Origin: Malacoraja senta
Lineage: Eukaryota
Reading direction: 5' to 3'
Assembly: GCA_038087875.1 (NCBI GenBank)
Contig: CM075977.1
Span: 186,868,001-186,932,000 of the forward strand
DNA: 64,000 nt
Shown: positions 10,880-64,000 of the stretch, piece by piece
Position numbering within the stretch: position 1 is the stretch's first letter
How the letters are laid out: each line of letters begins with the position of its first letter
Made by a program: the position numbers and the translations under genes
Notes under the pieces: generated by a model
Told to the model about the DNA's origin: nothing
Database searches by the model: none
What the model saw: the letters and a program-made list of their open reading frames with translations, nothing else

Positions 10880-11056
<177 letters not shown>

Positions 11057-34272: not shown

Positions 34273-35671
34273 CTGTACACAGACAGAGAGACAGGGAATC
34301 GAGAGGTTTAGTGTGTACCCAGGAACAAAGCTGGTACCTCCCCGTCCTCCCAACTGCAGGAAAGATTAGTTTTCACCCAAAGATGGACACAAAGTGCTGG
34401 AGTAACTCAGCGGAACAGGCAGCATCCCTGGAAAGAAGGAAGGGGTGAAGTTTTGGGTCGAGATCCTTCATCCGTGTGAAGAAGTTGAGAGGGGCAACGT
34501 TTTTAGATGATGTGTGTGGCATTTTTTTTTACACCGAGGATGGTGAATGCATGGAATGTGCTGCCATGGTTGGTGGTTGAGACAGATACGATAGTGGCAT
34601 TTAGGAGAGTTTTAGATAGGCATATGGATACATAGGGAATGGCANNNNNNNNNNNNNNNNNNNNNNNNNNNNNNNNNNNNNNNNNNNNNNNNNNNNNNNN
34701 NNNNNNNNNNNNNNNNNNNNNNNNNNNNNNNNNNNNNNNNNNNNNNNNNNNNNNNNNNNNNNNNNNNNNNNNNNNNNNNNNNNNNNNNNNNNNNNNNNNN
34801 NNNNNNNNNNNNNNNNNNNNNNNNNNNNNNNNNNNNNNNNNNNNNNNNNNNNNNNNNNNAGGGGGAGAGTGTCAATATTTTTGGTTGGAATCAGTGTTAG
34901 GTTATTGACCTGAAACTTTGAGTCTGATTCACTCTCCACACAACCTGCTGGGTACCGCCAGCATTTTCTGTTTTAGTTAACAGCAGCTCATGTCTTATGG
35001 TCTGATTGACAGTACAAGAAATGTAGTTAACTGGCAGTTGGCAGAAGTCCAAATGAAATGCAAGTTCTCCTTGATAGTGTGTTCTGGGACAACTTGGCCA
35101 CGTCAGCCGATTTGATATCACATGGCTTCAATTATTTTTAACAGACAAAGGCAAACCAAAGTGGTGTAACAGGAAAAGTGTAACCTGACACTGCAGCATG
35201 CTCATACTGTAAGCCTACTTCTGCTCATTTACACTCATGCAACAGAGAGAAAAAATAGATATATTCAACATTTTATGCAGCAGTGTTTGTAGCCAGTTCA
35301 CTTGTTTTTGGTGTTTTTATTTTCTGTGACATGGACCAGAAAGGAAAAGGATATGAAACCACACTGTAAAATCTTAATCCAGAAATAACCTTGCGGCTTG
35401 TCAGCCTCTGTTGTACAGCAGGGTTACTAAAGTTCATTTGACAGAAGGCTCCTACCCGATTAAAATGCATAATTCATAAACCTTGTGTTGAAGGGAGGGG
35501 AGATCCTGGGATAATAGCCACTATTCAATTAATGAAGGATCAAACAAAGAAATGCTGCAGACACGATAGAATATAGCACCAGTGTAATGTGTCGAAACAT
35601 GCAAACAGTGTGCCAACATGGAGCAGGCAAAAGAACAACAAACAAGGGAACGGAGCAGAAAAGGCAGAGAT

Positions 35672-41225: not shown

Positions 41226-41283
41226 ACTCTCCAATTGTATCCCTGTTTGATGTACAGGCAGAGTAATGGACTCAATCACTTAC

Positions 41284-41475
41284 TTTGGTTAACATTAGGA
41301 TATCCAAGTTGGAAAAAAAAGCTCTTTCCACTCTTCTTAGCTCCTCGTCAGACAGTGTGCAAATGAGAGATTGAGTGCGTGTGGCAGTAGAGGGATCTCC
41401 AATGATAACAAAGTCATCCAGCTTCGTGTCATTGCAAAGGTCTTTCAGCTGCAACCCTTGCCCAACTGTAATCAC
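41284..41475 (-). CDS. ABCA1-like: ABCA1-like exon 7 equivalent (copy 1)
   Basis: 192 bp; VITVGQGLQLKDLCNDTKLDD...ICTLSDEELRRVERAFFSNLDILMLTK. Confidence 0.88.
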
Positions 41476-42798
41476 CTGAAATGAATGACATAATACTTAA
41501 TGCTTTCTATGTCCGGAGTGCGCAGAAAGCTTATGTTTCATGATTTTACTATGGCACTACTATCACTGTGATAAGTGCTCCATGTAATAAAGTCAGTTGA
41601 CGTGAATGACAGTATACTGAACATGTTTAGGAATATAACAAATGGATAGAACTCTGAGCTTGATCCGCTCTTCAAATTGAATTGTGACTAGTCTTTAATT
41701 CCACCATATATATCCTAATATAATATTCCTTAACATCCTTGTATAACAAAAATGGATAATCTTCTGTAGCTTTGAAAATCAAATAGACAACCATTTAACT
41801 TAGTGCGTCCAAATCAAAATTAATTTCATCATAAACATCATTATCCAATCATTTAATCTTACACAATCTACCAACTCCAAACCTTTATCACTCGTGGCAA
41901 ATCTTGTTTGAGTTAAAATTAAAAACATAATGATTATATAGTGTCATTTGTTAGCTGCAAGGTTAACATGACCTCAAGTGGGCCGAATTGATACTATTTA
42001 TGTCATGGCAGAGTTTAACTGCTACCTTAGACTTGAAATTAGAATACAGCATGATAGTTAATTAAAAAGATGTCCAAATGACCCAAGGTAAACCTGCAAG
42101 TAGTCCAACCAAAGAATCATTCCTCATTCATTTCATGGACAGTACTTTACATGGCTTTTTCAGTCATGTAAATATTGAGTTGAATTAATCTACTTCCACA
42201 TTTCTCACTGGGTGGTTGCAAGTTAGAGTTTTAACAGCGTTTTTGCTATTTATTTCTGTCCAGTAATTATTTGTTGTATCTATCCCACATAACATGCACA
42301 TTGAATTACTGAATCAATGTCTGCTAGGTGAGCTCTTGCAAAATGATTGGCTTCATTGGTTTTAACCACCATTTGTAAAAGGTCCAATCCAAGGAGAATT
42401 TATTATTTCTGAAGGTGTGTTTGGCTCAGCAGGTAGCACTGTAACTCAAGACTGAAGGTCATGGGCCCATCATCTATCTCCCAGTGTGCAGTGTATTTGC
42501 ATGTAGATCTACAAAGAGATGCAGTCCTCCCCCAACCCCCCCACCCCACCCCCTAAAAAAAACTAACCGCTGGATGAACTCAGCAGGTCAGGCAGCATCA
42601 GTGAGGGAAATAGTATAAATGACGTTTCGAGTCAGGAACTATGCTGCTTGGCCCACTGAGTTCATCTTGAAGTTTGTTTTCTTTTTACGCAAGATTAGTG
42701 CAAATGCAAAGTGCTGCAAGCAGACACAATGTCTTATGATGGATTGTAGGCAGCTAAGAGTGGTTATTGTTGTTGGGATTATTATCATTTGTTTTTAC

Positions 42799-42920
42799 CT
42801 TTCCAAAATTTACATCAGCATCCAGGATGTTATCCACTGTAGAACGATCAAATGACATATTTTGGTACAGAAATTCCGATAGAGTCTCATTCTCGATTAA
42901 GAAATCCTGGAGCCTGAGAT
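42799..42920 (-). CDS. ABCA1-like: ABCA1-like exon 6 equivalent (copy 1)
   Basis: 122 bp; LRLQDFLIENETLSEFLYQNMSFDRSTVDNILDADVNFGK. Confidence 0.92.
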
Positions 42921-43039
42921 CTGCACAAATAATAACACACAATCAGTGATCAAATAATAAGAGCAGGGCCGATACCCCCCAACAAAATGAATCACTATTA
43001 CACTGAATGTAATACCATAGGTCCCATGGAAAATTAGAT

Positions 43040-43950
43040 CTATCAAATGGCATATCACATTTGCAATAAGAGAGATGAGTTGACAGCACGGATAGCAATA
43101 TATGAATATGATCCAATTGCTATAACAAAGACATGCTGAGGGGTGACTAAAGTATACTATCCAGTCGCATCACAGCTTGGTATGGCTACTGCTCTGCCCA
43201 AGATGGCAGGAAGTTGCGAACACAGCCCAGTCCATCACATAAACCAGACATCCCCCACCCCTTCACGCTGGCTCGGGAAAGCAGCCAACATAATCAAGGA
43301 ACACTCACGTCCCCGTCTTCCTCTCTCTCGTCAGGCAGAAGGTACAAAGGCTTGAAAGGCTTGAAAGGACATTCTTTCCCTCTGTTATCAGACTCTTGCG
43401 TGGAACTCTCAAGTGCTAAGGAGGAAAACTTCTTCTCCCTACTCACCTCACTGCGTCCCTTGCTCACTTAAACTAAACTAATAAGCCATACTGGGTGTTC
43501 AATATTACAGGTTATACAATGTTCCAAAAGAACAGAACAAAAGGGAGAGAAGGTAGAGTAACATTGTTAAACAAGGAAGGTATCAGAGTGGTGTTGAGTC
43601 ATGTTAAAGAGGCTAGTTATGTAAAACCATTATGGGGTGAAAATCAGGAAATGGCAGAGGAAAGACAACACAGATAAAAGTGATCTAGAGGACATAAATG
43701 TGACCTCTCAATAGGTTGGACCATTACTGGGGCATATTTGAAGGGAACTGTAATTGCCATGGGAAATGTTAATCTACATTTTGTTTGGACATATCATCTG
43801 GCAAGCATATCATTAAGAAATTAAATTTATCTTTGCTCAACATCTGCAGTTTTTTTGTGTTTCACTGGCAAGAGCATTGTTTAAGAAGAATATGTGGAGT
43901 GTGCCAGGGATTGCTTTTAGAACAGCATGTTACGGAACAAATCATCTAAA
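43040..43950 (+). mobile_element. Decayed CR1 endonuclease remnant with an inserted Rex/Babar 3' fragment
   Basis: NITGYTMFQKNRTKGREGRVTLL (APE-like) and SSGRRYKGL (Rex-like). Confidence 0.55.
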
Positions 43951-44874
43951 ATTTGTTGATGAGAAAAGCGGACACTCCCACAAGTGAAAATATCTCAGCA
44001 TCTGCCCTGGAGAAAAGGAATAGGGGATGTTTCAGGTTGTGACCCTTCTTCAGACTGAAGAATGGTTTCAACCCAAACGTCACCTATTCCTTCTCTCCAG
44101 AGATGCTGCCTGTCCCGCTGAGTTACTCCAGCATTTTGTGTCCATCCTCGGTGTAAACCAGCATCTGCAGTTCCTTCCTACCCTTTCAAGTCCCCTTAGG
44201 ATCTTATACAGCTTGTCAAGTTATGCATTGGGTCTCTCCTTTAGAGCACCCCAACAAGTAACCTTAACTCTAGGCTGTTGTTGCCAGCTGATGAGACCAA
44301 GCTTTAGCTTTGAATTCGGGGAATGGTTTGAAAAAAAACAACTTTGTAAACTTATCTTTACCCCTGCATTTTTGGACTTCACTTAATAATAACAATTATT
44401 AAGTATTTTAGAAGTGCAGTCGTGGTTGTGATGCAGGAAGCCAACTTGCATGCAGCAACAATGTGATGGTGATAGACCTTTCCTTCCAGTGCTGTGATGT
44501 CAGCTTTAAATAGTGACAGTGGCATTCACAATAATTCTCTTACAGCTTTTCAAAACAATGCCACGGATCTTTCACAACCCCTTGAGAGAACCGGTGGAAT
44601 CTCAGTTTAAAATAAGTAGTTGGCACATTCGGAAGAGCATTCCTAGCTTTTCTCCAATGTAACTGAATTTCTGGCAAGTGAAGAAAAAAACAACTTCTGA
44701 CATTATGCCAATTAAAGAATCGAGTGTATGATCTCTGCATACTTCGTTGGGGTTACTATAGTTTACACGGCGGCTGTGTTCATCGCTTAGACTCAAACAG
44801 AAACTCATTAATATTCATAGCAACAGATGGACCATGCGCAGGGGGATGCCAGTGACTTGTACAAGCATGTGAAA

Positions 44875-44890
44875 TGACCGATAGTAACCT
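44875..44890 (+). promoter_or_regulatory. LXR response element (DR4), TGACCGatagTAACCT
   Basis: 16/16 match to the human ABCA1 promoter DR4 (AGGTTActatCGGTCA), recalled from the literature. Confidence 0.75.
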
Positions 44891-45835
44891 CGCAGCCTGC
44901 ATTTCCTTCAAGAGCAGTTGCATGTTTTAACAGTAACTTCACAATCTGTGAAGTTGCAAAGGTGTCAAACCTCTGAAACAGGTTTAGCAGTTTAAGTCAA
45001 TAAGGTAGAAATTCAGCCTCAAGATACAGTATTTACACAACAGCATGCACCACTGTCAGACTGCTGTTGTTCGGCTTAAAAATAACTTGACTCAATATTG
45101 GGGAGAAAGGAAGGCCACCGAACTTGGCTCTATCCAACATACTGGGTAAATACAGAACAGAATCTGGTCGGCTGGATTCCAGCTGTATACTTTTTCCATG
45201 TATGATGATCCACAGCTTCAGATTACATCATAAGAAAATGACCATGCCAAGCATTTTGCAAAGTTACATGTCAGTAACGGCAAGCAAATAGGAATTGTGC
45301 ATGAGGGAGGAAGGGATGGAGGGGGGATCGGGATAGTGTGGCCAAGAATACAGGTGGGATGGGAGAGAGTAGGACATTCAGTACAGTATCAAAACATCTT
45401 CATGTTTTTCAACTGGCATTAACCACCCCAAACAGGAATGTGCAGTTGTTTCCGGCAGTTTGAAAGGGATTATTGTCACTCCTTACTGTAATAATTATTT
45501 GCTTTTGTATACAATTCTATCCATAACCAAATAGTCTATAACAGTTCAGTCAGGCAGCCCTATGTCATTGCCCTATCTCCCCTCTCAATAATTGATGCCT
45601 TAATGCTGCATCTTGTCTCCAGCAAGTTTCCCATTGGAGTGGAAGTAATCCACAAGGAGACCATTTCACTCCACAAGCAAAGTCATCCGAACCTCCGTCA
45701 ATAACAGCCACTTCCCATGTTTTGGGTACCATGTCTCAGTGAAGGCAGATGATGAAATTCACCAGTATGCCAACTGGATAGCTGATGAAAAAGTGTCTGG
45801 TGATCAAGATCTCCAAACTGACACTAGCCTCACAG

Positions 45836-46968
45836 CCATATAACCATATAACCATATAACCATAACAGCACGGAAACAGGCCATCTCGGCCCTTCAAGTC
45901 CGTGCCGAACATTTTTTTTAATTTTTTTTTTTTTTAATTAAAAATAAATACTTCCCCCTAGTCCCATCTACCTGCACTCAGACCATAACCCTCCATTCCT
46001 TTCCCGTCCATATACCCATCCAATCTATTTTTAAAGGATAACATCGAACCTGCCTCCACCACTTCCACTGGAAGCTCATTCCACACAGCTACCACTCTCT
46101 GAGTAAAGAAGTTCCCCCTAAACTTCTGTCCCTTAATTCTCAAGTCATGTCCCCTTGTTTGAATCTTCCCTACTCTCAATGGGAAAAGCTTATCCACGTC
46201 CACTCTGTCTAACCCGCTCATAATTTTAAAGACCTCTATCAAGTCCCCTCTTAACCTTCTGCGCTCCAAAGAATAAAGACCTAACTTGTTCAACCTTTCT
46301 CTGTAACTTAGTTGCTGAAACCCAGGCAACATTCTAGTAAATCTCCTCTGTACTCTCTCTATTTTGTTGACATCCTTCCTATAATTAAGCGACCAAAATT
46401 GTACTCCATACTCCAGAATTGGCCTCACCAATGCCTTGTACAATTTTAACATTACATCCCAACTTCTATATTCAATGCTCTGATTTATAAAGGCCAGCAC
46501 ACCAAAAGCTTTCTTTACCACCCTATCTACATGAGATTCCACCTTCAGGGAACTATGCACAGTTATTCCTAGATCCCTCTGTTCAACTGCATTCCTCAAT
46601 TCGCTACCATTTACCGTGTACGTCCTATTTTGATTTGTCCTGCCGAGATGTAGCACCTCACATTTGTCAGCATTAAACTCCATCTGCCATCTTTCAGCCC
46701 ACTCTTCCAAATGGCCTAAATCTCTCTGTAGACTTTGAAAATCTACTTCATTATCCACAACACCACCTATCTTAGTATCATCTGCATACTTACTAATCCA
46801 ATTTTCCACACCATCATCCAGGTCATTGATGTACATGACAAACAACAGTGGACCCAACACAGACCCCTGAGGCACCCCACTAGTCACCGGCCTCCAACCT
46901 GACAAACAGCCATCCACCATTACTCTCTGGCATCTCCCATTCAGCCACTGTTGAACCCATCTTGCTAC
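45836..46968 (-). mobile_element. CR1-clade LINE, 5'-truncated, young; open RT C-terminal ORF (45958-46920)
   Basis: SGVPQGSVLGPLLF..YINDL and YADD motifs, CR1 C-terminus LERRRLRGDLIEVFKIM, (TTATATGG)n 3' tail. Confidence 0.95.
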
Positions 46969-47049
46969 AAGCTACAGTGATCCTTGTCCTCATGTTCTGA
47001 GGCATGAATTACTTAAAGTGATCACCTTAAAGAGCAGAAGAAGAGCCAC

Positions 47050-47600
47050 CATTGTTATCCTGGGAAAACCCACGATATCCACTAGCAGGATAAGTGAATC
47101 CTCTCCGAGGTCAACGATCCAGCAGTGAGGTTCAAATTATGTTCAATCTGCTTCAATGGGCAGATATACTCACCACTAGACTCCCAAAACAAGCATTCTA
47201 TTTTGAGCTTCTTCACGGCAAGAGATTACCAGAAGGAAACTACAAGGATGTTCTCAAAGCCTCCTTGACAATGTGTAAATCCCCAATAACTCCTCGCCTA
47301 TGATTGAGCAAAATATAGAGGGAACCTTCAAGATAGCACTAAGATCCCACTGCTGGGAACACAAGGTAGTCAAGGAAAAATGGTGGAAGGATCATTGCAT
47401 AAGCTATCTAACCTGATATGCACTTGCTGCCCCTATTGTGGCAGAGTTTGTAGGTCACACATTAGCCTCAGCAGCCACCTCGCAACCCATGAAAATGGCA
47501 TATAAGTAAATTACCCTCAACCCTGAGAGATTCTTGGTCATAAGTAGAGAGCATCTTTAATGCCCAAGTCATTTCCAGGAAGCATGAAGATATAGGGGCC
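47050..47600 (+). mobile_element. Decayed RTE-clade (BovB-like) LINE 3' fragment
   Basis: RLPKQAFYFELLHGKR...YKDVLKASL resembles the RTE C-terminal motif. Confidence 0.65.
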
Positions 47601-47635
47601 AGTAGAGACCATGTGTCTTCTTGACATGACACCAA

Positions 47636-47925
47636 GGGTGGCACGGTGGCGCACCGGTAGAGTTGCTGCCTTACAGCGCCAGAGACCCGTGTTTGATCCT
47701 GACCACGCTGTCTATATGGAGTTTGTACATTCTCCCTTTGACCTGCGTGGGTTTTCTCCGGGAGCTCCTCCCACATTCCAAAGATGTACAGGTTTGCAGG
47801 TTAATTGGCTTGGTAAAATTGTAAATTGTCCCTAGTGTGTGTTGGATAGTGTAAGTGTGTGGGGATTGCTGGTCGGCGTGGACACGGTGGGCTGAAGGGC
47901 CTGTTTCCACGTTGTATCTCTAAAG
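47636..47925 (+). mobile_element. V-SINE (HE1-like)
   Basis: Matches the family sequence. Confidence 0.82.
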
Positions 47926-48288
47926 TTATAGGGACAGGTGCCCAAAATATTTTAAAAGAGTTTGGCTAATTGGAGTGTCTCAACTGAAAAAAGCGAGGCA
48001 TAGCAGTTTAAGGAATGAACAGCTTGATGTAATGAGGGAAGTGGGACTTCTGTTTAAAATATATTTGCATTAGTGTTCATAAATGTTTCATGGCATTGCA
48101 GTTCTGAAGATTCTATGTGGGAGGAAAGTGCATGTTGCTCGAACATAACAACTTCAGCCAGTCAGCGCTTCCTTTGTGCTGCTGCTCGAAGCAGTTTTTT
48201 GGCAGCGGTCCCAGTCTGGCAGCTCAGCTGATGATTGAAGGAGCAACACGCCTCATTCCCTGGAGCTGAGCAATGTGAACGAGAGAGG

Positions 48289-48304
48289 AGGTTACTATCG
48301 GTCA
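48289..48304 (-). promoter_or_regulatory. LXR response element (DR4), AGGTTActatCGGTCA
   Basis: Second, independent 16/16 match in the opposite orientation, with unrelated flanks. Confidence 0.75.
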
Positions 48305-51300
48305 TTGCTCTCCAGCCTACATTTGCCGCTATCAGATTACACCCAAGCTTAGTTCTCTGCCTGGGAGCGAGTCGAGATAGCCGATCATTTCAATTTGAAT
48401 TCAAGCAAATTTGATGGGAAAACAATTGTTCATTATATGAACAGCAGGAGACCTACAAGCCACTGAGCCTTCTTCAACTCTTCATTGCTTATGAGGCAGA
48501 ATCCTCGCAAATCATCATGCAAATCAAAACATGTTGGTGATCACAGGGAAACAGATTGCTAAAATGACATCTGTTTACAATCACAGCTTGCATGTTGTGC
48601 CTTTAATACGGTGAAGCATCCCACCCTGCTTCTCATTAGAGGTACTTGTCCATTCCTCCTGTTCTTACCAACCTTCACTTTGTCCGTAAGAAAAAACACA
48701 AAGTGCTGAAGTAAATCAGCGGACCAGGAGGCGGATCTGAAGAACATGGACAGACAACATTTCGGGTTTAGATGCTGACCGACCCACAGGGTGCTCCAAC
48801 ACTTTGAGTCCATTTTTGTAAAACCGCATCTGCAGTTCCTTCTATCTTCACTTTGTCCATACCTGGGATCCATCCCGGATTGTGATGGAATCTTCACCTT
48901 CCATGTTCTCATCCTCTAAGAGTCATAAAGCACGATACAGGCCCTTTGGCCCAACTCGTCCATGCTGATCAAGATGTCCTTTTAGACTCATTTGCCCACA
49001 ATTGGCCCATATTCCTCTAAACCTTTCCTATCCTTGTACCTGTACAAATGTCTTTTAAATGTTATTATCGTACCTGCCTCAATCACTTCCTCTGGCAGCT
49101 TGGGTTCTATATACATACACTCACTGTGTGAAACATTGCCTCTCGGGTTCCTATTTACTCACTCACATCAAATTTATATCCTTTAGGCTTTGGTTTCCTA
49201 ACCCGTGGGGAAAAAAAAGACTGTGTGCATTCACCCCTCTTCTAGTCCATGATAACATTTCTTCTTACAATTCATCAGGATCGAGAACGGCTTGTTTCAA
49301 CTTCTGCTTTATGGTTTCTGAGGTAGCTGATGAGGCCAATGATGTTTCCTGCAATGAGGGTGACACAGGCGGAGTGGGACATGGTTGATGGCATAGGTGG
49401 TTGGGAAGTTTTGGAGGTGGAACACACTCTTCAGCTGAATTTCTGTTTGCTTGTGGCAATAGGAACTGGAAATTCTCAGTGCTAAACCTGAACGATTCTT
49501 CTCCATTTTGAGCAGGCATGGGCCAAGACTTTCCACAGATTGGTAGGGACATTGCACTTTCTCAATGAAGACACATGTTGTTTTATCTCTCTTCTGGAAA
49601 TCTCCTGTCCTGGAGTAGCTCAGAATGAGAGTTTGGTGTTGCATGCATGCACTGAGACCTGTACAGTGGACTGATTGAATGCAATTGGGACCTTAGTGCT
49701 GAGGACATTGATTAGGAAAAGGATGGCAATATTGGTTATCTTATTCTTTTAGTGGATTTGGAAAAATTTACGCAGACAGCAGTTATCTCTCCAGTGCTTT
49801 ATGAATACACTGCTTATGAATGATAATCCCTTGTATTTAAGATAGACACAAGATGCTGGAGTAACTCAGCGGGATAGGCAGCATGTCTGGAGAGTAGGAA
49901 CGGGTGAAGTTTCAGGTCGAGACTCTTCTTCACACTTGTATTTACACAGATACAAGAGATTAAGCAAAACTTGCTTCCATTCCAGTTCTATGGATTCTGA
50001 GATGCCCAATGTGTGGTTTACAGTATATGCACTTTATGAATACATGCATGACCTTTAGAATGCAATCACAATTGTTGCTCTGGCTAAGCAATTTTCCATC
50101 AATTATCAGGAGAAGAAGCAGCTGGTTTAAGTTAGAAACAACCAGGTATTACAAGTTTTTTTTAAACTTTTACTAACACTACACCCACTCCATGAGATAT
50201 ATTGCACTCATCTAAATAAGAAGTCATCTTCCTCATATTCAAGTTATTCCATCTGGCTGCAAAAATGTTTGAGAAGGAGCAATGCACCAGGGAAAACACC
50301 TTGAAAATACTTCAAGCCCCTCTGCTGTTTGAAAGGACCAGCAGTACAGTGTCCTCCTGTACTGTGATCCTATCATTCACATGAAACACCAACAAACTGG
50401 CCATACTGACCTCAACATCAGCTGATAGCATGAACTCGTTGTTCCTGCATTTTGATAATAGTGCTAGTGTCAGCGTCTATCACAATCACCCTCCAATCTT
50501 TGTTCTACAAACATGACTCGTTTGCAGTGATGACACATTTGCACAGCCTTATGACAGATGACAAATTTCTTTCAGTTTTCAAACCATTAAAAGCTTCTTT
50601 TTTTAATGTTCCCAAATAAGATTCTCATAGGGCTACATCTCCCAGGAAACAAGCCCTACAGCTGATCATCCACACCAATTATCAACCACCCATCCACACT
50701 AATCCCATGTTATTCTCCTAATGTTCCCACCAACTCCCCACAGCTTCCACCACTCACCCACACACCAGGGACAATTTGCAGTGGCCAATTCACCTACCAA
50801 TCCACATATCTTTGCGATGTGGGAGGGCATTGGAGTACCAGAAGGAAACCCAAGTGCTCACAGGAAGAATGTGCAAATTTCACATGGACTGCTTCGGATG
50901 TCAGGACTGGGCCTTAACCACTGAGCTGTGAAGCAGTGGCTCTACTAGCTGCACCGTTATGTCTTTCACTTGCCGATCATTATTTCTCACGTGATCGTTC
51001 TAAAAATGGTGATTTCACTGAAATGTTAAAGGCCTAAATTTATTTCGGTTGAAGCAGAAATACATCTCTTGTTGCATGATTTAATAATATCGTGCAGCAA
51101 GTTAAAATTCCCTTCTGAGTTTGGGTTTTGACCACTACAGAACCACACTTCCGAAGCAGCATTCAATGTTTGTATGTTTTACCACAGCACTTCATCTCGT
51201 GTAAACAGCAGAGGAAGTAACTTTTTCCCATCTTGTCATATTCTGCAGTTTTCTAAGCTCGAGCTGAGAGAACACAGAAGAGCATGCTCCCCAAAACACA

Positions 51301-51779
51301 GGCACAAAAACTGCTGAACTACGCCACATGAATGGGCTCCTTACATATAACAGCAACCACACCAACCTGACCTGCATTGCAGAGGACTGTGAATAAAACA
51401 ACATGTATGGGAGATCAGCAAATCCAAAAGCATGTTACAACCAATTGAGTTTTAATCGTGCAAAATTAACACCACAGACCATTCAGCTCACACTTTTCTA
51501 CAGGCTCAGAAGGGCTGCCCCATCTAATCCCACATTCCAACTCTAAATCTAATGCACCGTAGGTCACAGCTCTTCAAATACACACTCAGACACTGTTTAA
51601 ATGCAATATCTCCACCTCCGTCACCCTTAAAGGCAGCAAATTCCAAACCTACAACACTCATTGTAGGAGAAAAAACAAATCCTCCTACCAGTTACTTTAA
51701 ATCTACGCCCTTGATATTTGACCACTGGTAAGAGAAGTAGTCAATCTATCTAGTCCCAGCTAATTCTATACATCTCAAT

Positions 51780-52812
51780 GCATCTCAACGCCTCTACTTC
51801 CTGAGAAGATTACGGAGATTTGATGCAACAGAGAGGATTCTCTTGAACCTTTACAGGTCTATAGTAGAGAACATATTGACTGGTTGCATCATGGCCTGGT
51901 TCGGCAACTTGAACGCCCTGGAGCGGGAAAGACTACAAAAAGTTGTGAACACCTCCAGTCCATCATCGGCTCCGACCTCCCGACCATCGAAGGGATTTAC
52001 CCGAGTCGCTGCCTTAAAAAGGCAGCCAGCATCATCAGAGACCCAGACCATCCTGGCCACACACTAATTTCTCCCCTGCCATCGGGAAGAAGATACAGGA
52101 GCCTGAAAACAGTAACGTCCAGGTTCAGGAACAGCTTCTTTGCTACAGCTATCAGGCTATTAGACAATAGACAATAGACAATATGTGCAGGAGTAGGCCA
52201 TTCGGCCCTTTGAGCCAGCACCGCCCTTCAATGTGATCACGGCGGATCATCCACAATCAGTACCCCGTTCCTGCCTTCTCCTCCTATCCCCTAACTCTGG
52301 TATCTTTAAGAGCTCTATCTAACTCTCTCTTGAAAGCATCCAGGGAACCGGCCTCCACTGCCTTCTGAGGCAGAGAAATCCACACTCATAACTCTGTGTG
52401 AAAAAGTTTTTCACTACTGCACATCACAACCTCAAATAAGCTCTGAACTACAATAGACTATTATTATTATNNNNNNNNNNNNNNNNNNNNNNNNNNNNNN
52501 NNNNNNNNNNNNNNNNNNNNNNNNNNNNNNNNNNNNNNNNNNNNNNNNNNNNNNNNNNNNNNNNNNNNNNNNNNNNNNNNNNNNNNNNNNNNNNNNNNNN
52601 NNNNNNNNNNNNNNNNNNNNNNNNNNNNNNNNNNNNNNNNNNNNNNNNNNNNNNNNNNNNNNNNNNNNNNNNNNNNNNCACACTGAACTTTTTTTTCTCT
52701 CTCTCTTTTATCATATTGCTTACAGTGTACTATGTTTACATATTCTGTTGTGCTGCAGCAAGTAAGAATTTCATTGTTCTATCTGGGACACATGACAATA
52801 TGACTCTTGAAT
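51780..52812 (+). mobile_element. Rex1/Babar LINE 3' portion, interrupted by a minus-strand CR1 3' end (~52160-52410) and an N run
   Basis: CIMAWFGN..RLQKVVNT; DPDHPGHTLISPLPSGRRYRSLKTVTSRFRNSFF; ...gacaatatgactcttga tail. Confidence 0.8.
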
Positions 52813-52819
52813 TACGTCT

Positions 52820-54900: not shown

Positions 54901-54976
54901 TCCTGAAACTTGTCTTTGAGGTGTCATGATGATTTCACTATTGAAAGTAAGGCAGCCATTTTATACAATGGAAGCC

Positions 54977-55176: not shown

Positions 55177-58128
55177 CGGAGACCGCGGCTTCGGAAGTCC
55201 TAAGGCCGAGCTGGGCGGAGCTCCAACACTGGCGATCCTCGGCGAAGATCCCAGGCCTCCGCGATTTTAAAGTCAGCTCCGCCCGCAGCTGGAACTCCGC
55301 AGACCACAGCTCCACGGTGTTAAAGTCGGCAGGCCCAATACTCCGGAGCTCCAACACGGCGATCTGGGTAGGGCATCGTCCGCTCCGCGATGGTCATACA
55401 GTGCTGCGCTGCTGCTGAAGCTCTGGCCGGTCTCCAGCAGGAAAGGCCGCGCCAATCCAGATGGTAGGCCACGAGGGGAGGGGGGGGGGGGCGAAGATGC
55501 GACTCGGAGAATAGACGCATCCTCGACCAGGAGTGACTGAGAAGACGGTTTCCCCCTCCCCCTGAAAATAAAAAGGACTAAAAGACCTCCAAAAACAAAC
55601 TTTTAGACAGACTAAAAATAACAAAAAGAAAGAAAGGACATACAGCTGCTGGCAAGGCTGCCATACTCGATAGCACCACCACTCGACGAGTCAGTGAAGA
55701 GATATACTGAGAAGAGATATACTGAGAAGTGAGTTGAGTGCAGCCTTGAGGACAGTATAGGTTTTCTTCACAGAGCAGACTAACCAAAGAATGTTTCCGC
55801 CAACAGGGAGATCCAAGGACCATCGGTGTAAGGCGGTCACTAACAAATCCAACATTGCTCATTGAAACATACAGAATAGTGAAAGGCTTGGATAGAGTGG
55901 ATGTGGAGAGGATGTTTCCACAAGTGAGAGAGTCTAGGACTAGATGTTATAGCTTCAGAATTAAACGACGTTCTTTTAGGAAGGAGATGGGGGAGGGATT
56001 TTTTTTAGTCAGAGGGTGGTGAATCTGTGGATTTCTTTGCCACAGAAGGGTGTGGAGGCCAAGTCAATGGATGTTTTTAAGGCAGAGACAGATAGATTCT
56101 TGATTAGTATGGGTGACAGAGGTTATGGGGAGAAGGCCGGAGAATAGGGTTAGGATGGAGAGATGGATCAGCCATGATTGAATGGTGGAGTAGACTTGAT
56201 GGGTTGAATGGCCTAATTCTACTATTCCTGATGACCTTATGAATTGTATTTGATAAGAATAGGTTTCTGAGGGAAAGCTCGATAAACATAGGAAGGATAA
56301 CTGAAAAGAAAATTAAAATGTAAACAAAATGTGCTGGGAGCAGTCAGCCAGTCAAGCAGCTTCTCTGGGGAGTGGAACAGTGAACATTTCAGTTTCTTTT
56401 TCCACGTTTGAGCAGTTGCAGCATTTCCTGGTTTTCTTTAGGATTTCCATAACTTGCTTCAAAAAGGAAGGGATTCAAGGAATATGGAAACAACAAACTG
56501 CAGATGATGGTTACACAAAAACCAGGGCGGCACAATGGCACAGTGGTAGAGTTGCTGCCTTACAGCGCCAGAGACCCGGGTTCGATCCTAACTACGGGTG
56601 CTGTGTGTATGGAGTTTGTACATTCTCCCTGTGACTGCGTGGGGTTTCACCGGGTGCTCCGGTTTCCTTCCACACTCCAAAGACATACAGGTTTGTAGGT
56701 TAATTGGCCTCAGTAAATTGTCCCTAGTGTGCAGAATAGTGTTAGTGCACAGTGTGATCGCTGGTTGGCACGGACTCGATGGACCGAAGGGCCTGTTTCT
56801 GTGCTGAATCTCTAAAGACTAAGGAGGGGAGATTAATTTGCATCGTACATAAATGTGGGCCAATTGGTATTTTGTGCCTGTCCACTTTATTTTTTGGAAT
56901 GACAATTTTCTGTGAAGTATAAACTTATGAACTATATGGTATCGTAACCCGAGGAAAGCAGCAAGAAGAGCAGACGAACAATCACAAACCCCAAACTCAT
57001 TACATCACTGACATTTGGCAAGAACATTTTGTTTTTCACTCTTGAGTCACAGCAGTTTTAAGTCAGGTAAGCAGGAACTGTCCTCCTGTAGCCAAGCAAC
57101 TGTATTTTCTTCATGCATGGGTTAATTAGGTATGTCAAATTAGTAGCAAAGTTAAAGGCTACCATAAGGGCATTTTTAAGCAATGCGCTGGCCCTAAAAC
57201 CCGCACATTGAAAGGAATGCCACTTTTATCAGATTCCTGTTAGCTGTGTCAGGTTAAAATTGCCCCCATTATATTGCAGCAGAGTTGCATAGGTTTGACC
57301 TTTATACCGAGTGCTATCAGTTAGTTTACCTGAGCGGATAAACTGCCTATTTTCAAGCAAACCTTATGTAAAGCCCATTGATATCCAACGGGTCAAATTA
57401 GGCGAGTTCCACAATGGGCAGACCTACCCATGATCTTTTGTACCTTGCCCTTTTGCCTAAATCTACTTTATACAGGCAGAAAAACAATCTGTGCTGATGT
57501 CGTGAAGGATCCATATGCATCGTATTTGGGCAAAGTTAATGCAATTTGGGTTTTGGAAATGAAACAATAACTCTGATTCTTTTTCCAGGGGTGCAATCTG
57601 ACCTGCTGAGTATTTCCAGCATTTTCTGGATTTATTATAAATGAATTTCCCAAAGGCCTGAGTCTGTAGTAGGAAACTGCAATACCGTGACTCTAAATTG
57701 GCATTCCTAAGGAGAGGCACAGCGATGTTGGAAATGGGAAGGGTCAACTGGCGAGACATGTTTTCTAATGATTGGATCAAACCATTGTTTGTGGATTATG
57801 CTTGGGGTGCTCTGGATATCTCTGTGGCAGACTGAACCACTGGAATGGAGGGGGAAAATATCATCTTCACTTTAATCGTTTCAGATGTTCACCCAAAAAG
57901 AAAGAAAAACAACAAACATCTCAGAAAGGTGCAGTTACATTATGAGACCAGCCGACTAACTCTGTCACACACAAACAGACTATCACATGGCACAGGAACC
58001 CATGCATACCTCTGTACAAAAGGAACACCAAGTGTAAAACAAAGTCTTGCGGAAATCAACAATGGTCACCTGGGCACCATCTAATACCATTTTCCAAACC
58101 TACTAATTCAGCTGCTAGGTCATCGTAC

Positions 58129-58218
58129 CTCTTGAGTGAGAATCATGAGATTTTTAAGCACTGAGTCCATGGCATTAACTACTTCTAATGTTGCAGGAGG
58201 ATCAATGGCCATTCCCTT
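58129..58218 (-). CDS. ABCA1-like: ABCA1-like exon 8 equivalent (duplicate copy)
   Basis: Same sequence as 39141-39230, inside the duplicated block. Confidence 0.75.
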
Positions 58219-60268
58219 CTGTAAAAGAAAGGAAGGAAAATAACAACAAATGTGCACAGGTAATGACAACCATCCATTAGAGAGTGTCCAGCCTGTCGTT
58301 TAACTTTAAGCATGCATTACAGTTCAGCACAAGATCACAAGAAAAACACTGGGACACAGGCCATCAGTCCAGTGATCTGTTCGCCTTTGGCACCATGACT
58401 TTCTCTCATACTTTATTAATTGTGTTCGGGATTTTTCTAAGTTCCTCCCTGGTATTTGAAATTAAACCATCTTTAACCTTAGTGTCCTCAATGATGAAGA
58501 CTGGCACAAAAGATTGATTTAACATATCTGCCCTTTCTTTGTTTACTGTTATTAATTCACCAGCCTTGTTCCTTCGAGGTCTCACTTACCTTAGTTGCCA
58601 CCTTCCTGTTTACATATTCACAGAAACTCTCTCTTGATTAGCTTCCTTTCTGAATATTGATTCCCTCACCACTGGTGCATTGAAAATCCTCAAACCAGCA
58701 GTTCTTCATCGACCATGAATGTTGTAATTAGTCTGATGGGAATATTCAATCGTATAGTAGGGAGAATATCTCTCATCTTCTTTAAAACAGCTCTGTGGTA
58801 TCTCTGATGCCTTGTCCAAAGACAGGCTCCTCTGACATTGCAGTTCTTCCTTGGTGATGTCCATCTATGTCATCTTCATTTGGTACCTAAGAGTCTAGTG
58901 TTTAGTTTAGAGTTATAGCGTAGAAACAGGCCCTTTGGCACAGCGAGGTTACCCGACCAGTGATCTCTGCACACTAACACTATCCTATACACACAAAGGA
59001 CAACTTACAATTATGCCAAGCCAAATTAGCCTACAAACCTGTACGTCTTTGACATGTGGGAGGAAACCGGAGCTCCAGAGAAAACCCACACAGGTCATGG
59101 GGAGAACGTACCAACTCCTTACAGACAAGCACCCATAGTCAGGATCGAACCTGGGATCCTGGGCTCTGGCACTGTGAGGCAGCAACTCTACCACTGCGCC
59201 AATGTGCCGCCCATATTGAGCCTCTCTATCATGTAACAACACAAATGTCTTCAAAACAGGAAGTGAGGGAGGAACACAGGAGGTCGGGCAGCTTCCGTGG
59301 ATGGAAATGGACAGACAATGTTTCAGGTTGGGACCTTTCTTCAGAGGTTTTGCCCCTTGTCCATCGCTCTGAAGAAGGGTCCCAGCCTGAATCCATTCCC
59401 TTCCACAGATGCTGCCTTACCCACTCAGTTCCTCCAGCACTTTGTGTTTTGCTCAAGATTCACACTGCCAAGGGTGGTGGTGGAGGCAGATACGATCGTG
59501 ACATTTACGAGGCTTTTAGATATGGATATGTAGGAAATGGAGGAATCTACAGTGTGCAGGCAGATGAGATTAGTTGATCTTGGCATCATGTTGGGCACAG
59601 ACATTGTAGCCTGTGTTCCTGTGCTGTACTGTTCCATATTCGGCACTCTCTTGTGTCACTATCTATGTGACCCACTCGATGGAAGCAGAAGTTGCACTGC
59701 TGGGTCATCAATCAATTGATAAGAGGCAGCACCTGTCTTTGGGACAGTGCCTTAGATACCTGTCTCACCCTTGGCACCTTTACGTATCGCTTAACCATCT
59801 TTAGCTCCTTCAGGCATGTCCTCATTCTTGATATATTGCGTTTTTCAGCAAGAAATAGCCATTGAAATAGATTCCATTTCCACAGCTTTCCTCGTTGCTC
59901 GTTCTTTCCCCGGCCCCAGTGGAAAATATTACCAGAGATAAATAAGCCTAAAGTACGTAGACCAACAGGACTCCAAACCTTTATCATAGAAGTCCAGTTG
60001 CATCCCTGTGTAGGAAGGAACTGCAGATGCTGGTTTAAACCAGATAGACACAAAATGCTGGAGTAACTCAGTGCGACAGGCAGCATCTCCGGAGAGAAGA
60101 AATGGTGACATTTCAGGTTGAGAGTCCTCTTCAGACTCCTTCTTCACCCATTCCTTCTCTCCAGAGATGCTGCCTGTTTTGCTGAGTTACTCCAGCATTT
60201 TGTGCCTCTCTCTCTCCAATTGTATCCCTGTTTGATGTACAGGCAGAGTAATGGACTCAATCACTTAC

Positions 60269-60460
60269 TTTGGTTAACATTAGGATATCCAAGTTGGAAA
60301 AAAAAGCTCTTTCCACTCTTCTTAGCTCCTCGTCAGACAGTGTGCAAATGAGAGATTGAGTGCGTGTGGCAGTAGAGGGATCTCCAATGATAACAAAGTC
60401 ATCCAGCTTCGTGTCATTGCAAAGGTCTTTCAGCTGCAACCCTTGCCCAACTGTAATCAC
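60269..60460 (-). CDS. ABCA1-like: ABCA1-like exon 7 equivalent (duplicate copy)
   Basis: Same translation as 41284-41475. Confidence 0.8.
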
Positions 60461-61781
60461 CTGAAATGAATGACATAATACTTAATGCTTTCTATGTCCG
60501 GAGTGCGCAGAAAGCTTATGTTCATGATTTTACTATGGCACTACTATCACTGTGATAAGTGCTCCATGTAATAAAGTCAGTTGACGTGAATGACAGTATA
60601 CTGAACATGTTTAGGAATATAACAAATGGATAGAACTCTGAGCTTGATCCGCTCTTCAAATTGAATTGTGACTAGTCTTTAATTCCACCATATATATCCT
60701 AATATAATATTCCTTAACATCCTTGTATAACAAAAATGGATAATCTTCTGTAGCTTTGAAAATCAAATAGACAACCATTTAACTTAGTGCGTCCAAATCA
60801 AAATTAATTTCATCATAAACATCATTATCCAATCATTTAATCTTACACAATCTACCAACTCCAAACCTTTATCACTCGTGGCAAATCTTGTTTGAGTTAA
60901 AATTAAAAACATAATGATTATATAGTGTCATTTGTTAGCTGCAAGGTTAACATGACCTCAAGTGGGCCGAATTGATACTATTTATGTCATGGCAGAGTTT
61001 AACTGCTACCTTAGACTTGAAATTAGAATACAGCATGATAGTTAATTAAAAAGATGTCCAAATGACCCAAGGTAAACTGCAAGTAGTCCAACCAAAGAAT
61101 CATTCCTCATTCATTTCATGGACAGTACTTTACATGGCTTTTTCAGTCATGTAAATATTGAGTTGAATTAATCTACTTCCACATTTCTCACTGGGTGGTT
61201 GCAAGTTAGAGTTTTAACAGCGTTTTTGCTATTTATTTCTGTCCAGTAATTATTTGTTGTATCTATCCCACATAACATGCACATTGAATTACTGAATCAA
61301 TGTCTGCTAGGTGAGCTCTTGCAAAATGATTGGCTTCATTGGTTTTAACCACCATTTGTAAAAGGTCCAATCCAAGGAGAATTTATTATTTCTGAAGGTG
61401 TGTTTGGCTCAGCAGGTAGCACTGTAACTCAAGACTGAAGGTCATGGGCCCATCATCTATCTCCCAGTGTGCAGTGTATTTGCATGTAGATCTACAAAGA
61501 GATGCAGTCCTCCCCCAACCCCCCCACCCCACCCCCTAAAAAAAACTAACCGCTGGATGAACTCAGCAGGTCAGGCAGCATCAGTGAGGGAAATAGTATA
61601 AATGACGTTTCGAGTCAGGAACTATGCTGCTTGGCCCACTGAGTTCATCTTGAAGTTTGTTTTCTTTTTACGCAAGATTAGTGCAAATGCAAAGTGCTGC
61701 AAGCAGACACAATGTCTTATGATGGATTGTAGGCAGCTAAGAGTGGTTATTGTTGTTGGGATTATTATCATTTGTTTTTAC

Positions 61782-61903
61782 CTTTCCAAAATTTACATCA
61801 GCATCCAGGATGTTATCCACTGTAGAACGATCAAATGACATATTTTGGTACAGAAATTCCGATAGAGTCTCATTCTCGATTAAGAAATCCTGGAGCCTGA
61901 GAT
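61782..61903 (-). CDS. ABCA1-like: ABCA1-like exon 6 equivalent (duplicate copy)
   Basis: Same translation as 42799-42920. Confidence 0.82.
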
Positions 61904-63857
61904 CTGCACAAATAATAACACACAATCAGTGATCAAATAATAAGAGCAGGGCCGATACCCCCCAACAAAATGAATCACTATTACACTGAATGTAATACCA
62001 TAGGTCCCATGGAAAATTAGATCTATCAAATGGCATATCACATTTGCAATAAGAGAGATGAGTTGACAGCACGGATAGCAATATATGAATATGATCCAAT
62101 TGCTATAACAAAGACATGCTGAGGGGTGACTAAAGTATACTATCCAGTCGCATCACAGCTTGGTATGGCTACTGCTCTGCCCAAGATGGCAGGAAGTTGC
62201 GAACACAGCCCAGTCCATCACATAAACCAGACATCCCCCACCCCTTCACGCTGGCTCGGGAAAGCAGCCAACATAATCAAGGAACACTCACGTCCCCGTC
62301 TTCCTCTCTCTCGTCAGGCAGAAGGTACAAAGGCTTGAAAGGCTTGAAAGGACATTCTTTCCCTCTGTTATCAGACTCTTGCGTGGAACTCTCAAGTGCT
62401 AAGGAGGAAAACTTCTTCTCCCTACTCACCTCACTGCGTCCCTTGCTCACTTAAACTAAACTAATAAGCCATACTGGGTGTTCAATATTACAGGTTATAC
62501 AATGTTCCAAAAGAACAGAACAAAAGGGAGAGAAGGTAGAGTAACATTGTTAAACAAGGAAGGTATCAGAGTGGTGTTGAGTCATGTTAAAGAGGCTAGT
62601 TATGTAAAACCATTATGGGGTGAAAATCAGGAAATGGCAGAGGAAAGACAACACAGATAAAAGTGATCTAGAGGACATAAATGTGACCTCTCAATAGGTT
62701 GGACCATTACTGGGGCATATTTGAAGGGAACTGTAATTGCCATGGGAAATGTTAATCTACATTTTGTTTGGACATATCATCTGGCAAGCATATCATTAAG
62801 AAATTAAATTTATTTTTGCTCAACATCTGCAGTTTTTTTGTGTTTCACTGGCAAGAGCATTGTTTAAGAAGAATATGTGGAGTGTGCCAGGGATTGCTTT
62901 TAGAACAGCATGTTACGGAACAAATCATCTAAAATTTGTTGATGAGAAAAGCGGACACTCCCACAAGTGAAAATATCTCAGCATCTGCCCTGGAGAAAAG
63001 GAATAGGGGATGTTTCAGGTTGTGACCCTTCTTCAGACTGAAGAATGGTTTCAACCCAAACATCACCTATTCCTTCTCTCCAGAGATGCTGCCTGTCCCG
63101 CTGAGTTACTCCAGCATTTTGTGTCCATCCTCGGTGTAAACCAGCATCTGCAGTTCCTTCCTACCCTTTCAAGTCCCCTTAGGATCTTATACAGCTTGTC
63201 AAGTTATGCATTGGGTCTCTCCTTTAGAGCACCCCAACAAGTAACCTTAACTCTAGGCTGTTGTTGCCAGCTGATGAGACCAAGCTTTAGCTTTGAATTT
63301 GGGGAATGGTTTGAAAAAAAACAACTTTGTAAACTTATCTTTACCCCTGCATTTTTGGACTTCACTTAATAATAACAATTATTAAGTATTTTAGAAGTGC
63401 AGTCGTGGTTGTGATGCAGGAAGCCAACTTGCATGCAGCAACAATGTGATGGTGATAGACCTTTCCTTCCAGTGCTGTGATGTCAGCTTTAAATAGTGAC
63501 AGTGGCATTCACAATAATTCTCTTACAGCTTTTCAAAACAATGCCACGGATCTTTCACAACCCCTTGAGAGAACCGGTGGAATCTCAGTTTAAAATAAGT
63601 AGTTGGCACATTCGGAAGAGCATTCCTAGCTTTTCTCCAATGTAACTGAATTTCTGGCAAGTGAAGAAAAAAACAACTTCTGACATTATGCCAATTAAAG
63701 AATCGAGTGTATGATCTCTGCATACTTCGTTGGGGTTACTATAGTTTACACGGCGGCTGTGTTCATCGCTTAGACTCAAACAGAAACTCATTAATATTCA
63801 TAGCAACAGATGGACCATGCGCAGGGGGATGCCACTGACTTGTACAAGCATGTGAAA

Positions 63858-63873
63858 TGACCGATAGTAACCT
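63858..63873 (+). promoter_or_regulatory. LXRE DR4 (duplicate of 44875-44890)
   Basis: TGACCGATAGTAACCT inside the duplicated block. Confidence 0.7.
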
Positions 63874-64000
63874 CGCAGCCTGCATTTCCTTCAAGAGCAG
63901 TTGCATGTTTTAACAGTAACTTCACAATCTGTGAAGTTGCAAAGGTGTCAAACCTCTGAAACAGGTTTAGCAGTTTAAGTCAATAAGGTAGAAATTCAGC

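What the first reader, a model, noticed from the sequence alone, without database searches (positions are those of the whole stretch)
44875..48304. Two perfect copies of the human ABCA1-promoter LXR element deep inside an intron
Seen: TGACCGATAGTAACCT at 44875-44890 and its reverse complement at 48289-48304, 3.4 kb apart, in opposite orientations, with unrelated flanks and not in any repeat I recognise. Established (from memory): AGGTTActatCGGTCA is the LXR/RXR DR4 of the human ABCA1 proximal promoter. Even the 4-bp spacer and the following C match. A given 16-mer is expected about 3e-5 times in 128 kb of random sequence. Inference: this is an oxysterol-responsive intronic enhancer cluster or internal promoter 5' of the exon 6 equivalent. 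If the gene is the ABCA7 orthologue (mammalian ABCA7 is reported to be SREBP2- rather than LXR-driven), it would imply ancestral LXR control of the whole ABCA1/7 clade.
Basis: partly seen in the sequence, partly recalled or inferred. Interest (0 to 1): 0.85.

Follow-up and report, generated by a model that had tools for sequence, protein, structure and literature searches.

The report
Ancient LXR element in ABCA1 intron
A skate's cholesterol-export gene ABCA1 carries, in intron 5, a short DNA block holding a binding site for the oxysterol sensor LXR that is also present at the same spot in sturgeon, bowfin, tarpon and turkey, so one of the two reported copies is an old conserved candidate regulatory element rather than a coincidence.

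Summary
TGACCGATAGTAACCT, the published human ABCA1 promoter LXR element, occurs perfectly at 44875 (+) and 48289 (-).

The gene is ABCA1 itself, on the minus strand, not ABCA7. Both sites lie in intron 5, 1.95 and 5.4 kb upstream of exon 6. Both are single-copy DNA, not transposon sequence.

Site B (48288-48326, gene-sense) is the orthologue of a roughly 40-nt conserved non-coding element in intron 5 of sterlet, bowfin, tarpon and turkey ABCA1. A profile built without the skate finds it with E = 1.2e-7. Across the five species the site varies mainly at degenerate positions of the LXR consensus.

Site A has no counterpart outside skates, but it keeps 7 of the 9 invariant flank positions (P about 0.002). 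It is probably an old inverted paralogue.

An intronic oxysterol-responsive enhancer is well supported by sequence and conservation. Binding and ligand response are untested. An internal promoter is not supported.

This is a new member of a known kind. The new part is the age of the intronic element (shared by cartilaginous and bony vertebrates). The scan had not noted it elsewhere.

The parts
48289..48304 (-). Site B: perfect DR4 (TGACCGATAGTAACCT), in the sense orientation of the gene
   Evidence: Unchanged in four related species.
48288..48326 (-). Conserved non-coding element of intron 5: about 20 nt of flank (AAATGTAGGCTGGAGAGCAA) followed by the DR4
   Evidence: Top hit of a bowfin+sterlet profile, E 1.2e-7. 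Blastn against sterlet gives 94% over 34 nt, E 5e-7, and against bowfin E 2.6e-4. Five-species alignment A10.
44875..44890 (+). Site A: perfect DR4, antisense to the gene, 1951 nt upstream of exon 6
   Evidence: Single copy. Related species B, C and D carry T>C at 44882, in the spacer.
44857..44874 (+). Flank of site A that keeps 7 of the 9 positions invariant in the five orthologous intron-5 elements
   Evidence: empirical P 1.6e-3. Fifteen control DR4 sites score 1-5.
44750..44765 (-). Weak DR4-like site (TAAACTATAGTAACCC), gene-sense, 110 nt from site A
   Evidence: 2 mismatches to the consensus. Not followed further.
63858..63873 (+). Third copy of the 16-mer: the duplicate image of site A
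55177..64000 (.). 99.65% identical copy of 36187-45017 starting at the edge of an N gap: probably contig ends that overlapped and were not merged
   Evidence: Depth not doubled, and a single allele at 44852 in run X1.
42796..42924 (-). ABCA1 exon 6 (aa about 140-182), the exon downstream of both sites
   Evidence: tblastn with bowfin and skate ABCA1.
45770..47092 (-). LINE fragment with a reverse-transcriptase ORF between A and B. Absent in related species, so A and B are about 2.3 kb apart there.
47534..47974 (.). High-copy SINE between A and B
35421..35436 (-). Intron 8 DR4-like site (TGAACTTTAGTAACCC), gene-sense, 1.1 kb upstream of exon 9. Same type and place as in bowfin, sterlet and tarpon.
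   Evidence: The leave-one-out test was not significant on its own.
35097..35191 (-). Intron 8 conserved non-coding block (core ATAATTGAAGCCATGTGA...GCTGACGTGGC)
   Evidence: Blastn against sterlet E 4e-5 and turkey E 1e-4. Four-species alignment.

Best explanation
The window holds the 5' half of the ABCA1 gene of a skate-like fish, on the minus strand.

Site B is the skate copy of an old intronic regulatory element of ABCA1: a DR4 nuclear-receptor site with about 20 nt of conserved flank. It lies in intron 5, in the sense orientation, 0.5-5 kb upstream of exon 6. It was already there in the common ancestor of cartilaginous and bony vertebrates.

Most likely mechanism. The LXR/RXR heterodimer sits on the DR4, with RXR on AGGTTA and LXR on CGGTCA. 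When oxysterols rise, it recruits co-activators and raises ABCA1 transcription from the promoter. The promoter carries its own DR4. Further DR4 sites lie in intron 8.

Site A is a second, inverted copy that is absent from the four bony vertebrates in which the element was found. It probably arose as a paralogue of B and has been held by the same constraint.

The copy at 63858 is an assembly duplicate of A.

The letter-perfect match to the human promoter element reflects repeated retention of, or convergence on, the same near-optimal DR4 variant. It does not reflect descent from the promoter site.

Shown here: presence, single-copy state, gene identity and position, orthology and conservation of B, and the pattern of constraint. 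Inferred: LXR/RXR binding, ligand response, enhancer activity, and the origin of A.
For: - Gene: the exon at 33985-34353 (-) matches human ABCA1 with E 3.7e-30, against ABCA4 at 2.7e-11. Exon order is colinear with bowfin and skate ABCA1.
- The 16-mer is an experimentally used human LXRE.
- Not a repeat: single-copy depth.
- Orthology of B: same intron, same orientation, and similar distance to exon 6 in sterlet (661 nt), bowfin (1791), tarpon (about 530) and turkey (1280).
- Flank-only match to bowfin is reached by 1 of 1000 shuffles. The 20 nt upstream of the DR4 are 17, 16 and 13 of 20 identical to skate B in sterlet, bowfin and turkey.
- A profile built from bowfin and sterlet only finds 48288-48326 as the best hit in the window, E 1.2e-7. 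It finds the tarpon element at E 4e-7.
- An unbiased intron-against-intron blastn finds this block as the only non-coding match with bowfin.
- Constraint fits LXR. In the five orthologues, DR4 positions 2-5 and 9-15 never vary. Positions 1, 6, 7, 8 and 16 vary, close to the consensus TGACCKNNAGTRACCY.
- ABCA1 loci are enriched in such sites: bowfin has 6 against 0.12 expected. The same layout is seen in sterlet and tarpon.
- Human ABCA1 has five LXR ChIP-seq peaks, three of them with a DR4 (PMC3295715).
- Cartilaginous fishes have functional LXR alpha and beta (PMC5381633).
- Site A keeps 7 of the 9 invariant flank positions, P 1.6e-3, while controls score 5 or less.
Against: - No binding, chromatin or expression data for this species could be obtained.
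- DR4 sites are also bound by other receptors (TR/RXR and others), so conservation alone does not name LXR.
- The bowfin and tarpon copies have a weaker first half-site (AGACCT, CGACCT).
- The element was not found in Xenopus laevis or in zebrafish abca1b.
- No shark, ray or chimaera locus could be read, so within cartilaginous fishes the evidence comes from one group of close relatives.
- Among those relatives (about 4% divergence), conservation of 16-19 nt is weak evidence.
- The test on site A's flank was designed after seeing the alignment.
- A and B are identical at all five variable DR4 positions but random at the variable flank positions. A simple old-duplicate model does not predict this.
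Confidence: 0.75

Rival explanations
1. Chance or neutral sequence: the sites are fortuitous matches without function.
For: Only 16-19 nt are shared between A and B. Conservation among the close relatives is uninformative at about 4% divergence. For site A alone there is no counterpart outside skates.
Against: About 3e-5 matches to one 16-mer are expected per window, and shuffles give 0.02 even with 2 mismatches. Site B is conserved with its flank in four bony vertebrates. Variation is confined mainly to degenerate positions of the motif.
Confidence: 0.04
2. Repeat origin: the 16-mer is part of a transposable element or other dispersed repeat.
For: The window is full of SINE, LINE and Penelope-like repeats, and other short isolated exact matches in it are repeat fragments. 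In two related species the assembly graph branches at 48280-48309.
Against: Depth at both sites is single-copy, next to repeats with depths in the millions. Flanks are unrelated. Unbroken unitigs cross both sites in the species' own run. B has orthologues at the same intronic place in distant vertebrates.
Confidence: 0.03
3. The element works as a DR4 site for another nuclear receptor pair (thyroid hormone receptor/RXR or another DR4 binder), or as a composite site in which the conserved flank factor is the main actor, rather than for LXR.
For: DR4 is shared by several RXR partners (established knowledge). Nine flank positions are as invariant as the half-sites, so a second factor probably binds next to the DR4.
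Against: The invariant AGTAACC with a TGACCK partner is the LXR-type variant. The 16-mer itself is the validated LXR site of the same gene in human. ABCA1 is the textbook LXR target, with several LXR peaks in human.
Confidence: 0.13
4. Internal promoter: the sites mark an alternative transcription start 5' of exon 6.
For: In the real promoters of bowfin, sterlet, tarpon and zebrafish a DR4 sits about 30 nt before the TATA box, so a DR4 can be promoter-proximal. Local CpG content is somewhat above the intron median.
Against: There is no TATAAA after site A or site B, in contrast. CpG observed/expected is only 0.52-0.59. Conservation stops right after the DR4. In other species the element lies 0.5-1.8 kb from exon 6, with no conserved downstream block.
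Confidence: 0.05

Closest known systems
Human ABCA1 proximal-promoter DR4 LXR response element (TGACCGatagTAACCT)
   Same: Identical 16 bases. Same gene family member (ABCA1). Same DR4 geometry.
   Different: The human element lies about 30 nt before the TATA box. The skate sites lie in intron 5, without a TATA box. The fish counterparts of the human element are the promoter DR4s of bowfin, sterlet, tarpon and zebrafish, not sites A or B.
Intragenic LXR binding sites of human and mouse ABCA1 seen by ChIP-seq (five peaks, three with DR4; PMC3295715)
   Same: Several LXR sites spread over one ABCA1 locus, some with DR4 motifs, acting with the promoter site.
   Different: Conservation down to cartilaginous fishes is not described in the papers I could search.
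Intronic LXRE-A and LXRE-B of ABCG1 and the paired LXREs of SREBP-1c
   Same: Paired or multiple DR4 sites of the TGACCG..AGTAACCC type drive an LXR target. The turkey intron-5 site (TGACCGCCAGTAACCC) matches, from my memory, the SREBP-1c type.
   Different: Different genes. No orthology. Those elements have been tested experimentally; these have not.
Vertebrate conserved non-coding elements (CNEs)
   Same: Single-copy, same position and orientation across more than 400 million years, short core.
   Different: Much shorter (about 40 nt) than classical developmental CNEs. It lies in a metabolic gene and is centred on one recognisable receptor site.

Membership tests
LXR/RXR response element (DR4 LXRE) | Two hexamer half-sites as a direct repeat with a 4-nt spacer, matching the LXR-type consensus TGACCKNNAGTRACCY | tested here: met
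   Sites A and B have 0 mismatches.
LXR/RXR response element (DR4 LXRE) | Sequence shown experimentally to mediate LXR response | tested here: met
   The 16-mer is identical to the human ABCA1 promoter LXRE used and mutated in published reporter work. The evidence is for human proteins, not skate proteins.
LXR/RXR response element (DR4 LXRE) | Purifying selection follows the binding motif | tested here: met
   In five orthologues, positions 2-5 and 9-15 are invariant and only 1, 6, 7, 8 and 16 vary.
LXR/RXR response element (DR4 LXRE) | The receptor exists in the taxon | not tested
   Taken from a paper: LXR alpha and beta orthologues with functional assays in chondrichthyans (PMC5381633). Not checked in this genome.
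LXR/RXR response element (DR4 LXRE) | Bound by LXR/RXR and responsive to oxysterol or synthetic agonist in the species | not testable with these tools
   Needs gel-shift, ChIP and reporter assays.
Conserved non-coding element | Orthologous position and orientation | tested here: met
   Intron 5, sense strand, upstream of exon 6 in skate, sterlet, bowfin, tarpon and turkey.
Conserved non-coding element | Similarity beyond chance, found without using the query species | tested here: met
   Leave-one-out profile E 1.2e-7. Unbiased blastn E 5e-7.
Transposable-element-derived repeat | Many genomic copies with homologous flanks | tested here: not met
   Single-copy depth. Flank alignment at shuffle level.
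Alternative (internal) promoter | Core promoter signals (TATA box or CpG island) and transcript starts | tested here: not met
   No TATA box after A or B, unlike the true promoters. CpG observed/expected 0.52-0.59. Transcript starts were not tested.

The most novel reading that the evidence does not exclude
ABCA1 was already wired to LXR through a fixed multi-element layout before cartilaginous and bony vertebrates split more than 400 million years ago. The layout is a promoter DR4 with a TATA box, a second 5' DR4, the intron-5 element, and an intron-8 module with two DR4s. The skate lineage later added an inverted paralogue of the intron-5 element (site A), which selection has held at every constrained position. 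This would make the locus one of the oldest traceable ligand-receptor-enhancer circuits in vertebrate lipid metabolism.
Probability: 0.45. Interest if true: 0.6.

Novelty: new member of a known kind. Interest (0 to 1): 0.5.

Why it matters
LXR control of ABCA1 is central to cholesterol efflux and HDL formation. It has been studied almost only through the mammalian promoter element.

This work points to a 40-nt intronic element that selection has kept from skates to birds. It names the bases that matter: the two half-sites and nine flank positions. That gives a compact, directly testable enhancer. It also hints at a partner factor binding next to LXR, and it dates the LXR-ABCA1 link to the ancestor of jawed vertebrates.

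It also shows why an exact match to a famous human element need not mean descent from it. The same near-optimal variant recurs at different ABCA1 sites in different lineages.

In practical terms, the finding exposes a false 19-kb duplication that doubles three ABCA1 exons in this assembly.

Tried and rejected
- Repeat origin was rejected by read depth and flank tests.
- ABCA7 identity was rejected.
- A terminal-inverted-repeat transposon bounded by A and B was considered and rejected. There is no target-site duplication in the flanks. The interior is a nested LINE and SINE that is partly absent in relatives. B is ancient.
- A structured RNA was considered: no Rfam family in 44000-49000.
- The bacterial-type promoter scan is irrelevant to a vertebrate and was ignored.
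- Profile searches combining a scaffold protein with skate exon fragments mostly failed, because MAFFT scattered the fragments. A cleaned version (A9) recovered only skate ABCA1 proteins.
- The thorny skate, little skate, reedfish and anole ABCA1 genes are longer than 100 kb, so no DNA was served.
- Two proteins were not on record.
- Human peak coordinates were not in the held supplements.
- The intron-8 DR4 of the skate did not pass the leave-one-out test on its own: E 0.45. Only the neighbouring block did.
- No RNA evidence could be collected, because both read-laying runs went to DNA comparisons.
Full report
**Observation.** A search for TGACCGATAGTAACCT finds three perfect matches: 44875-44890 (+), 48289-48304 (-) and 63858-63873 (+). 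Shuffled sequence gives 0.02 matches even with two mismatches allowed.

The third copy has flanks identical to the first. It lies in a 99.65% identical repeat of 36187-45017 at 55177-64000. This second copy begins exactly at the edge of the N gap 54977-55176. The offset (about 18,990) is what two contigs overlapping by 36187-54976 would give if they were not merged.

In the species' own run X1, the contig over 44300-45862 has word depth 28, against 34-44 for the neighbouring non-duplicated contigs. At 44852 it shows only the allele of the second copy. I therefore read the third copy as an assembly artefact.

A and B share exactly 19 nt. Beyond that, their flanks align no better than shuffles.

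Four papers give the 16-mer as the DR4 LXR element of the human ABCA1 proximal promoter.

**Gene and position.** The exons are on the minus strand. The ORF at 33985-34353 matches human ABCA1 residues 269-353 with E 3.7e-30. ABCA4 scores 2.7e-11 and ABCA7 does not appear.

With bowfin ABCA1 and skate ABCA1 as guides, the exons are:
- exon 6: 42796-42924
- exon 7: 41296-41478
- exon 8: 39138-39239
- exon 9: 34033-34287

Both sites are therefore in intron 5. A is 1951 nt upstream of exon 6 and antisense to the gene. B is 5365 nt upstream and in the sense orientation. The ABCA7 alternative is not.

**Not a repeat.** I laid contigs of the species' own run and of three related species on 44300-48700. 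Both sites fall in bins of single-copy depth (28-47). The LINE at 45770-47092 and the SINE at 47534-47974 reach depths in the millions.

The LINE carries a reverse-transcriptase ORF. It is absent in the relatives, so A and B are about 2.3 kb apart there.

In relatives B, C and D, site A carries one change, 44882 T>C, in the spacer. Site B's 19-mer is unchanged in relatives B, D, E and F. At about 4% divergence this says little either way.

**The decisive evidence: other vertebrates.** I fetched annotated ABCA1 loci of these species:
- bowfin: L001
- Xenopus laevis: L002
- zebrafish abca1b: L003
- sterlet: L004
- turkey: L005
- tarpon: L006

NIPSNAP lies next to the gene in four of them, which fits orthology.

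The bowfin locus has six matches to the LXR-type consensus TGACCKNNAGTRACCY with at most one mismatch. All are in the sense orientation, against 0.12 expected. One of them, at 18545, lies in intron 5, 1791 nt before exon 6.

Aligned with skate site B, that bowfin site shares the DR4 and also the flank upstream of it. The flank alone reaches a score met by 1 of 1000 shuffles.

The other species have the same block in the same intron and orientation:
- sterlet: 661 nt before exon 6, DR4 TGACCGATAGTAACCC
- tarpon: about 530 nt before exon 6
- turkey: 1280 nt before exon 6, DR4 TGACCGCCAGTAACCC

The 20 nt upstream of the DR4 match skate B at 17 (sterlet), 16 (bowfin) and 13 (turkey) positions.

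A profile built from bowfin and sterlet only, searched against the whole skate window on both strands, puts 48288-48326 first with E 1.2e-7. Site A follows at E 0.03, through its core only. The same profile finds the tarpon element at E 4e-7.

I also ran an unbiased blastn of the skate introns 5-8 against those of each species. This block is the only non-coding hit with bowfin, and it gives 94% over 34 nt (E 5e-7) with sterlet.

The element was not found in Xenopus laevis or zebrafish abca1b.

**Constraint.** In the five orthologous elements, DR4 positions 2-5 (GACC) and 9-15 (AGTAACC) never vary. Positions 1, 6, 7, 8 and 16 do vary. Four of those are degenerate positions of the LXR consensus; position 1, a T in the consensus, also varies.

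Nine flank positions are also invariant: ATGT at -18 to -15, G at -13, G at -6, G at -4, and AA at -2 and -1. The flank suggests that a second factor binds beside the receptor. I did not identify it.

**Site A.** It has no counterpart in any bony vertebrate. Even so, it matches 7 of the 9 invariant flank positions in exact register, and only 3 of the 15 variable ones. The empirical probability over all positions of the window is 1.6e-3. Fifteen other ABCA1 DR4 sites score 1 to 5.

The simplest reading is an old inverted paralogue of the intron-5 element, kept under the same constraint. Two cautions apply. The test was framed after seeing the alignment. And the identity of A and B at all five variable DR4 positions is not predicted by simple old duplication. 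It may reflect selection for one optimal variant, or local gene conversion.

**Why the human 16-mer?** The promoter element of bony fishes is recognisable as a DR4 followed about 30 nt later by TATAAAAG. It reads TGACCGAGAGTAACCC in bowfin, sterlet and tarpon, and TGACCGACAGTAACCC in zebrafish.

The variant TGACCGATAGTAACCY turns up at different sites in different lineages: the human promoter, sterlet intron 5, tarpon's second 5' site, and skate A and B. The exact match to human is therefore recurrence of a favoured variant, not orthology with the promoter site.

**Wider layout.** Bowfin, sterlet and tarpon share five sites: the promoter DR4, a second DR4 about 0.6-0.7 kb downstream of it, the intron-5 element, and two sites in intron 8.

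For intron 8, the skate has:
- a first site, TGAACTTTAGTAACCC, at 35421-35436 (-)
- a conserved block at 35097-35191, matching sterlet (E 4e-5) and turkey (E 1e-4)
- a second intron-8 DR4 that looks decayed

Human macrophages show five LXR peaks on ABCA1, three of them with DR4 motifs (PMC3295715). I could not map them onto these elements.

Cartilaginous fishes have functional LXR alpha and beta (PMC5381633).

**Internal promoter.** I found no support.
- Neither site is followed by a TATA box.
- CpG observed/expected is 0.52-0.59, against a window median of 0.33 and values above 1 in true islands elsewhere in the window.
- Conservation ends at the DR4.
- No Rfam family lies in the region.

**Limits.** No RNA, chromatin or binding data could be collected. 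No shark, ray or chimaera locus was reachable, because the two skate ABCA1 genes on record exceed the 100-kb limit. The mammalian counterpart is untested.

**Verdict.** The finding is real and not an artefact, apart from the third copy. Site B is an old conserved DR4 element of ABCA1 intron 5 and most likely an LXR enhancer. Site A is probably its lineage-specific inverted paralogue. This is a new member of a well-known kind of element, with a noteworthy age.

Noticed in passing
window 55177-64000 (copy of 36187-45017), N gap 54977-55176: A probable false duplication doubles ABCA1 exons 6, 7 and 8 in the assembly (second copies near 61773-61907, 60269-60463 and 58126-58227). This would corrupt gene models.
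   Followed up: partly
window 45770-47092: A LINE fragment with a reverse-transcriptase ORF (Pfam RVT_1) is absent at this place in three related species. It is therefore a young insertion in the window's lineage.
   Followed up: partly
window 48280-48309; runs X4 and X8: In two related species the assembly graph branches at this 30-mer (DR4 plus GAGCAA). In X8, a 610-nt contig shares only these 30 nt and then continues with unrelated sequence where the conserved flank should be. Depths of 24 and 32 against 29 suggest a second locus rather than an allele.
   Followed up: no
window 35097-35191 and 35421-35436: Intron 8 holds a second conserved non-coding block, shared with sterlet, bowfin and turkey. 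Next to it is a DR4-like site of the same type as in bony fishes. The second intron-8 DR4 of bony vertebrates seems decayed in the skate.
   Followed up: partly
window 37537-37742, 39983-40230, 47711-47861, 50739-50884; L003 30825-43334: SINE copies in the skate introns align at 64-79% identity with sequences in zebrafish abca1b introns, which points to a very old shared SINE core.
   Followed up: no
window 3400-4150, 10400-10900, 36000-36400: CpG-island-like stretches (observed/expected about 1.0-1.26; GC up to 0.63 in the first and third) lie inside the gene. The last one sits at the start of the duplicated block.
   Followed up: no
window 21141-21156; L001 30926, L004 34170, L003 62044, L005 60507, L006 32338: A DR4 look-alike (TGCCYTAYAGTRACCC) lies inside a coding exon in every species. 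Coding constraint explains its conservation, so it should not be counted as a response element.
   Followed up: partly
L001 7169 and 7790, L004 5879 and 6561, L006 7210 and 7877, L003 4220: Bony-fish ABCA1 promoters keep the DR4-then-TATAAAAG arrangement known from human. Bowfin, sterlet and tarpon have a second perfect DR4 about 0.6-0.7 kb further on.
   Followed up: partly
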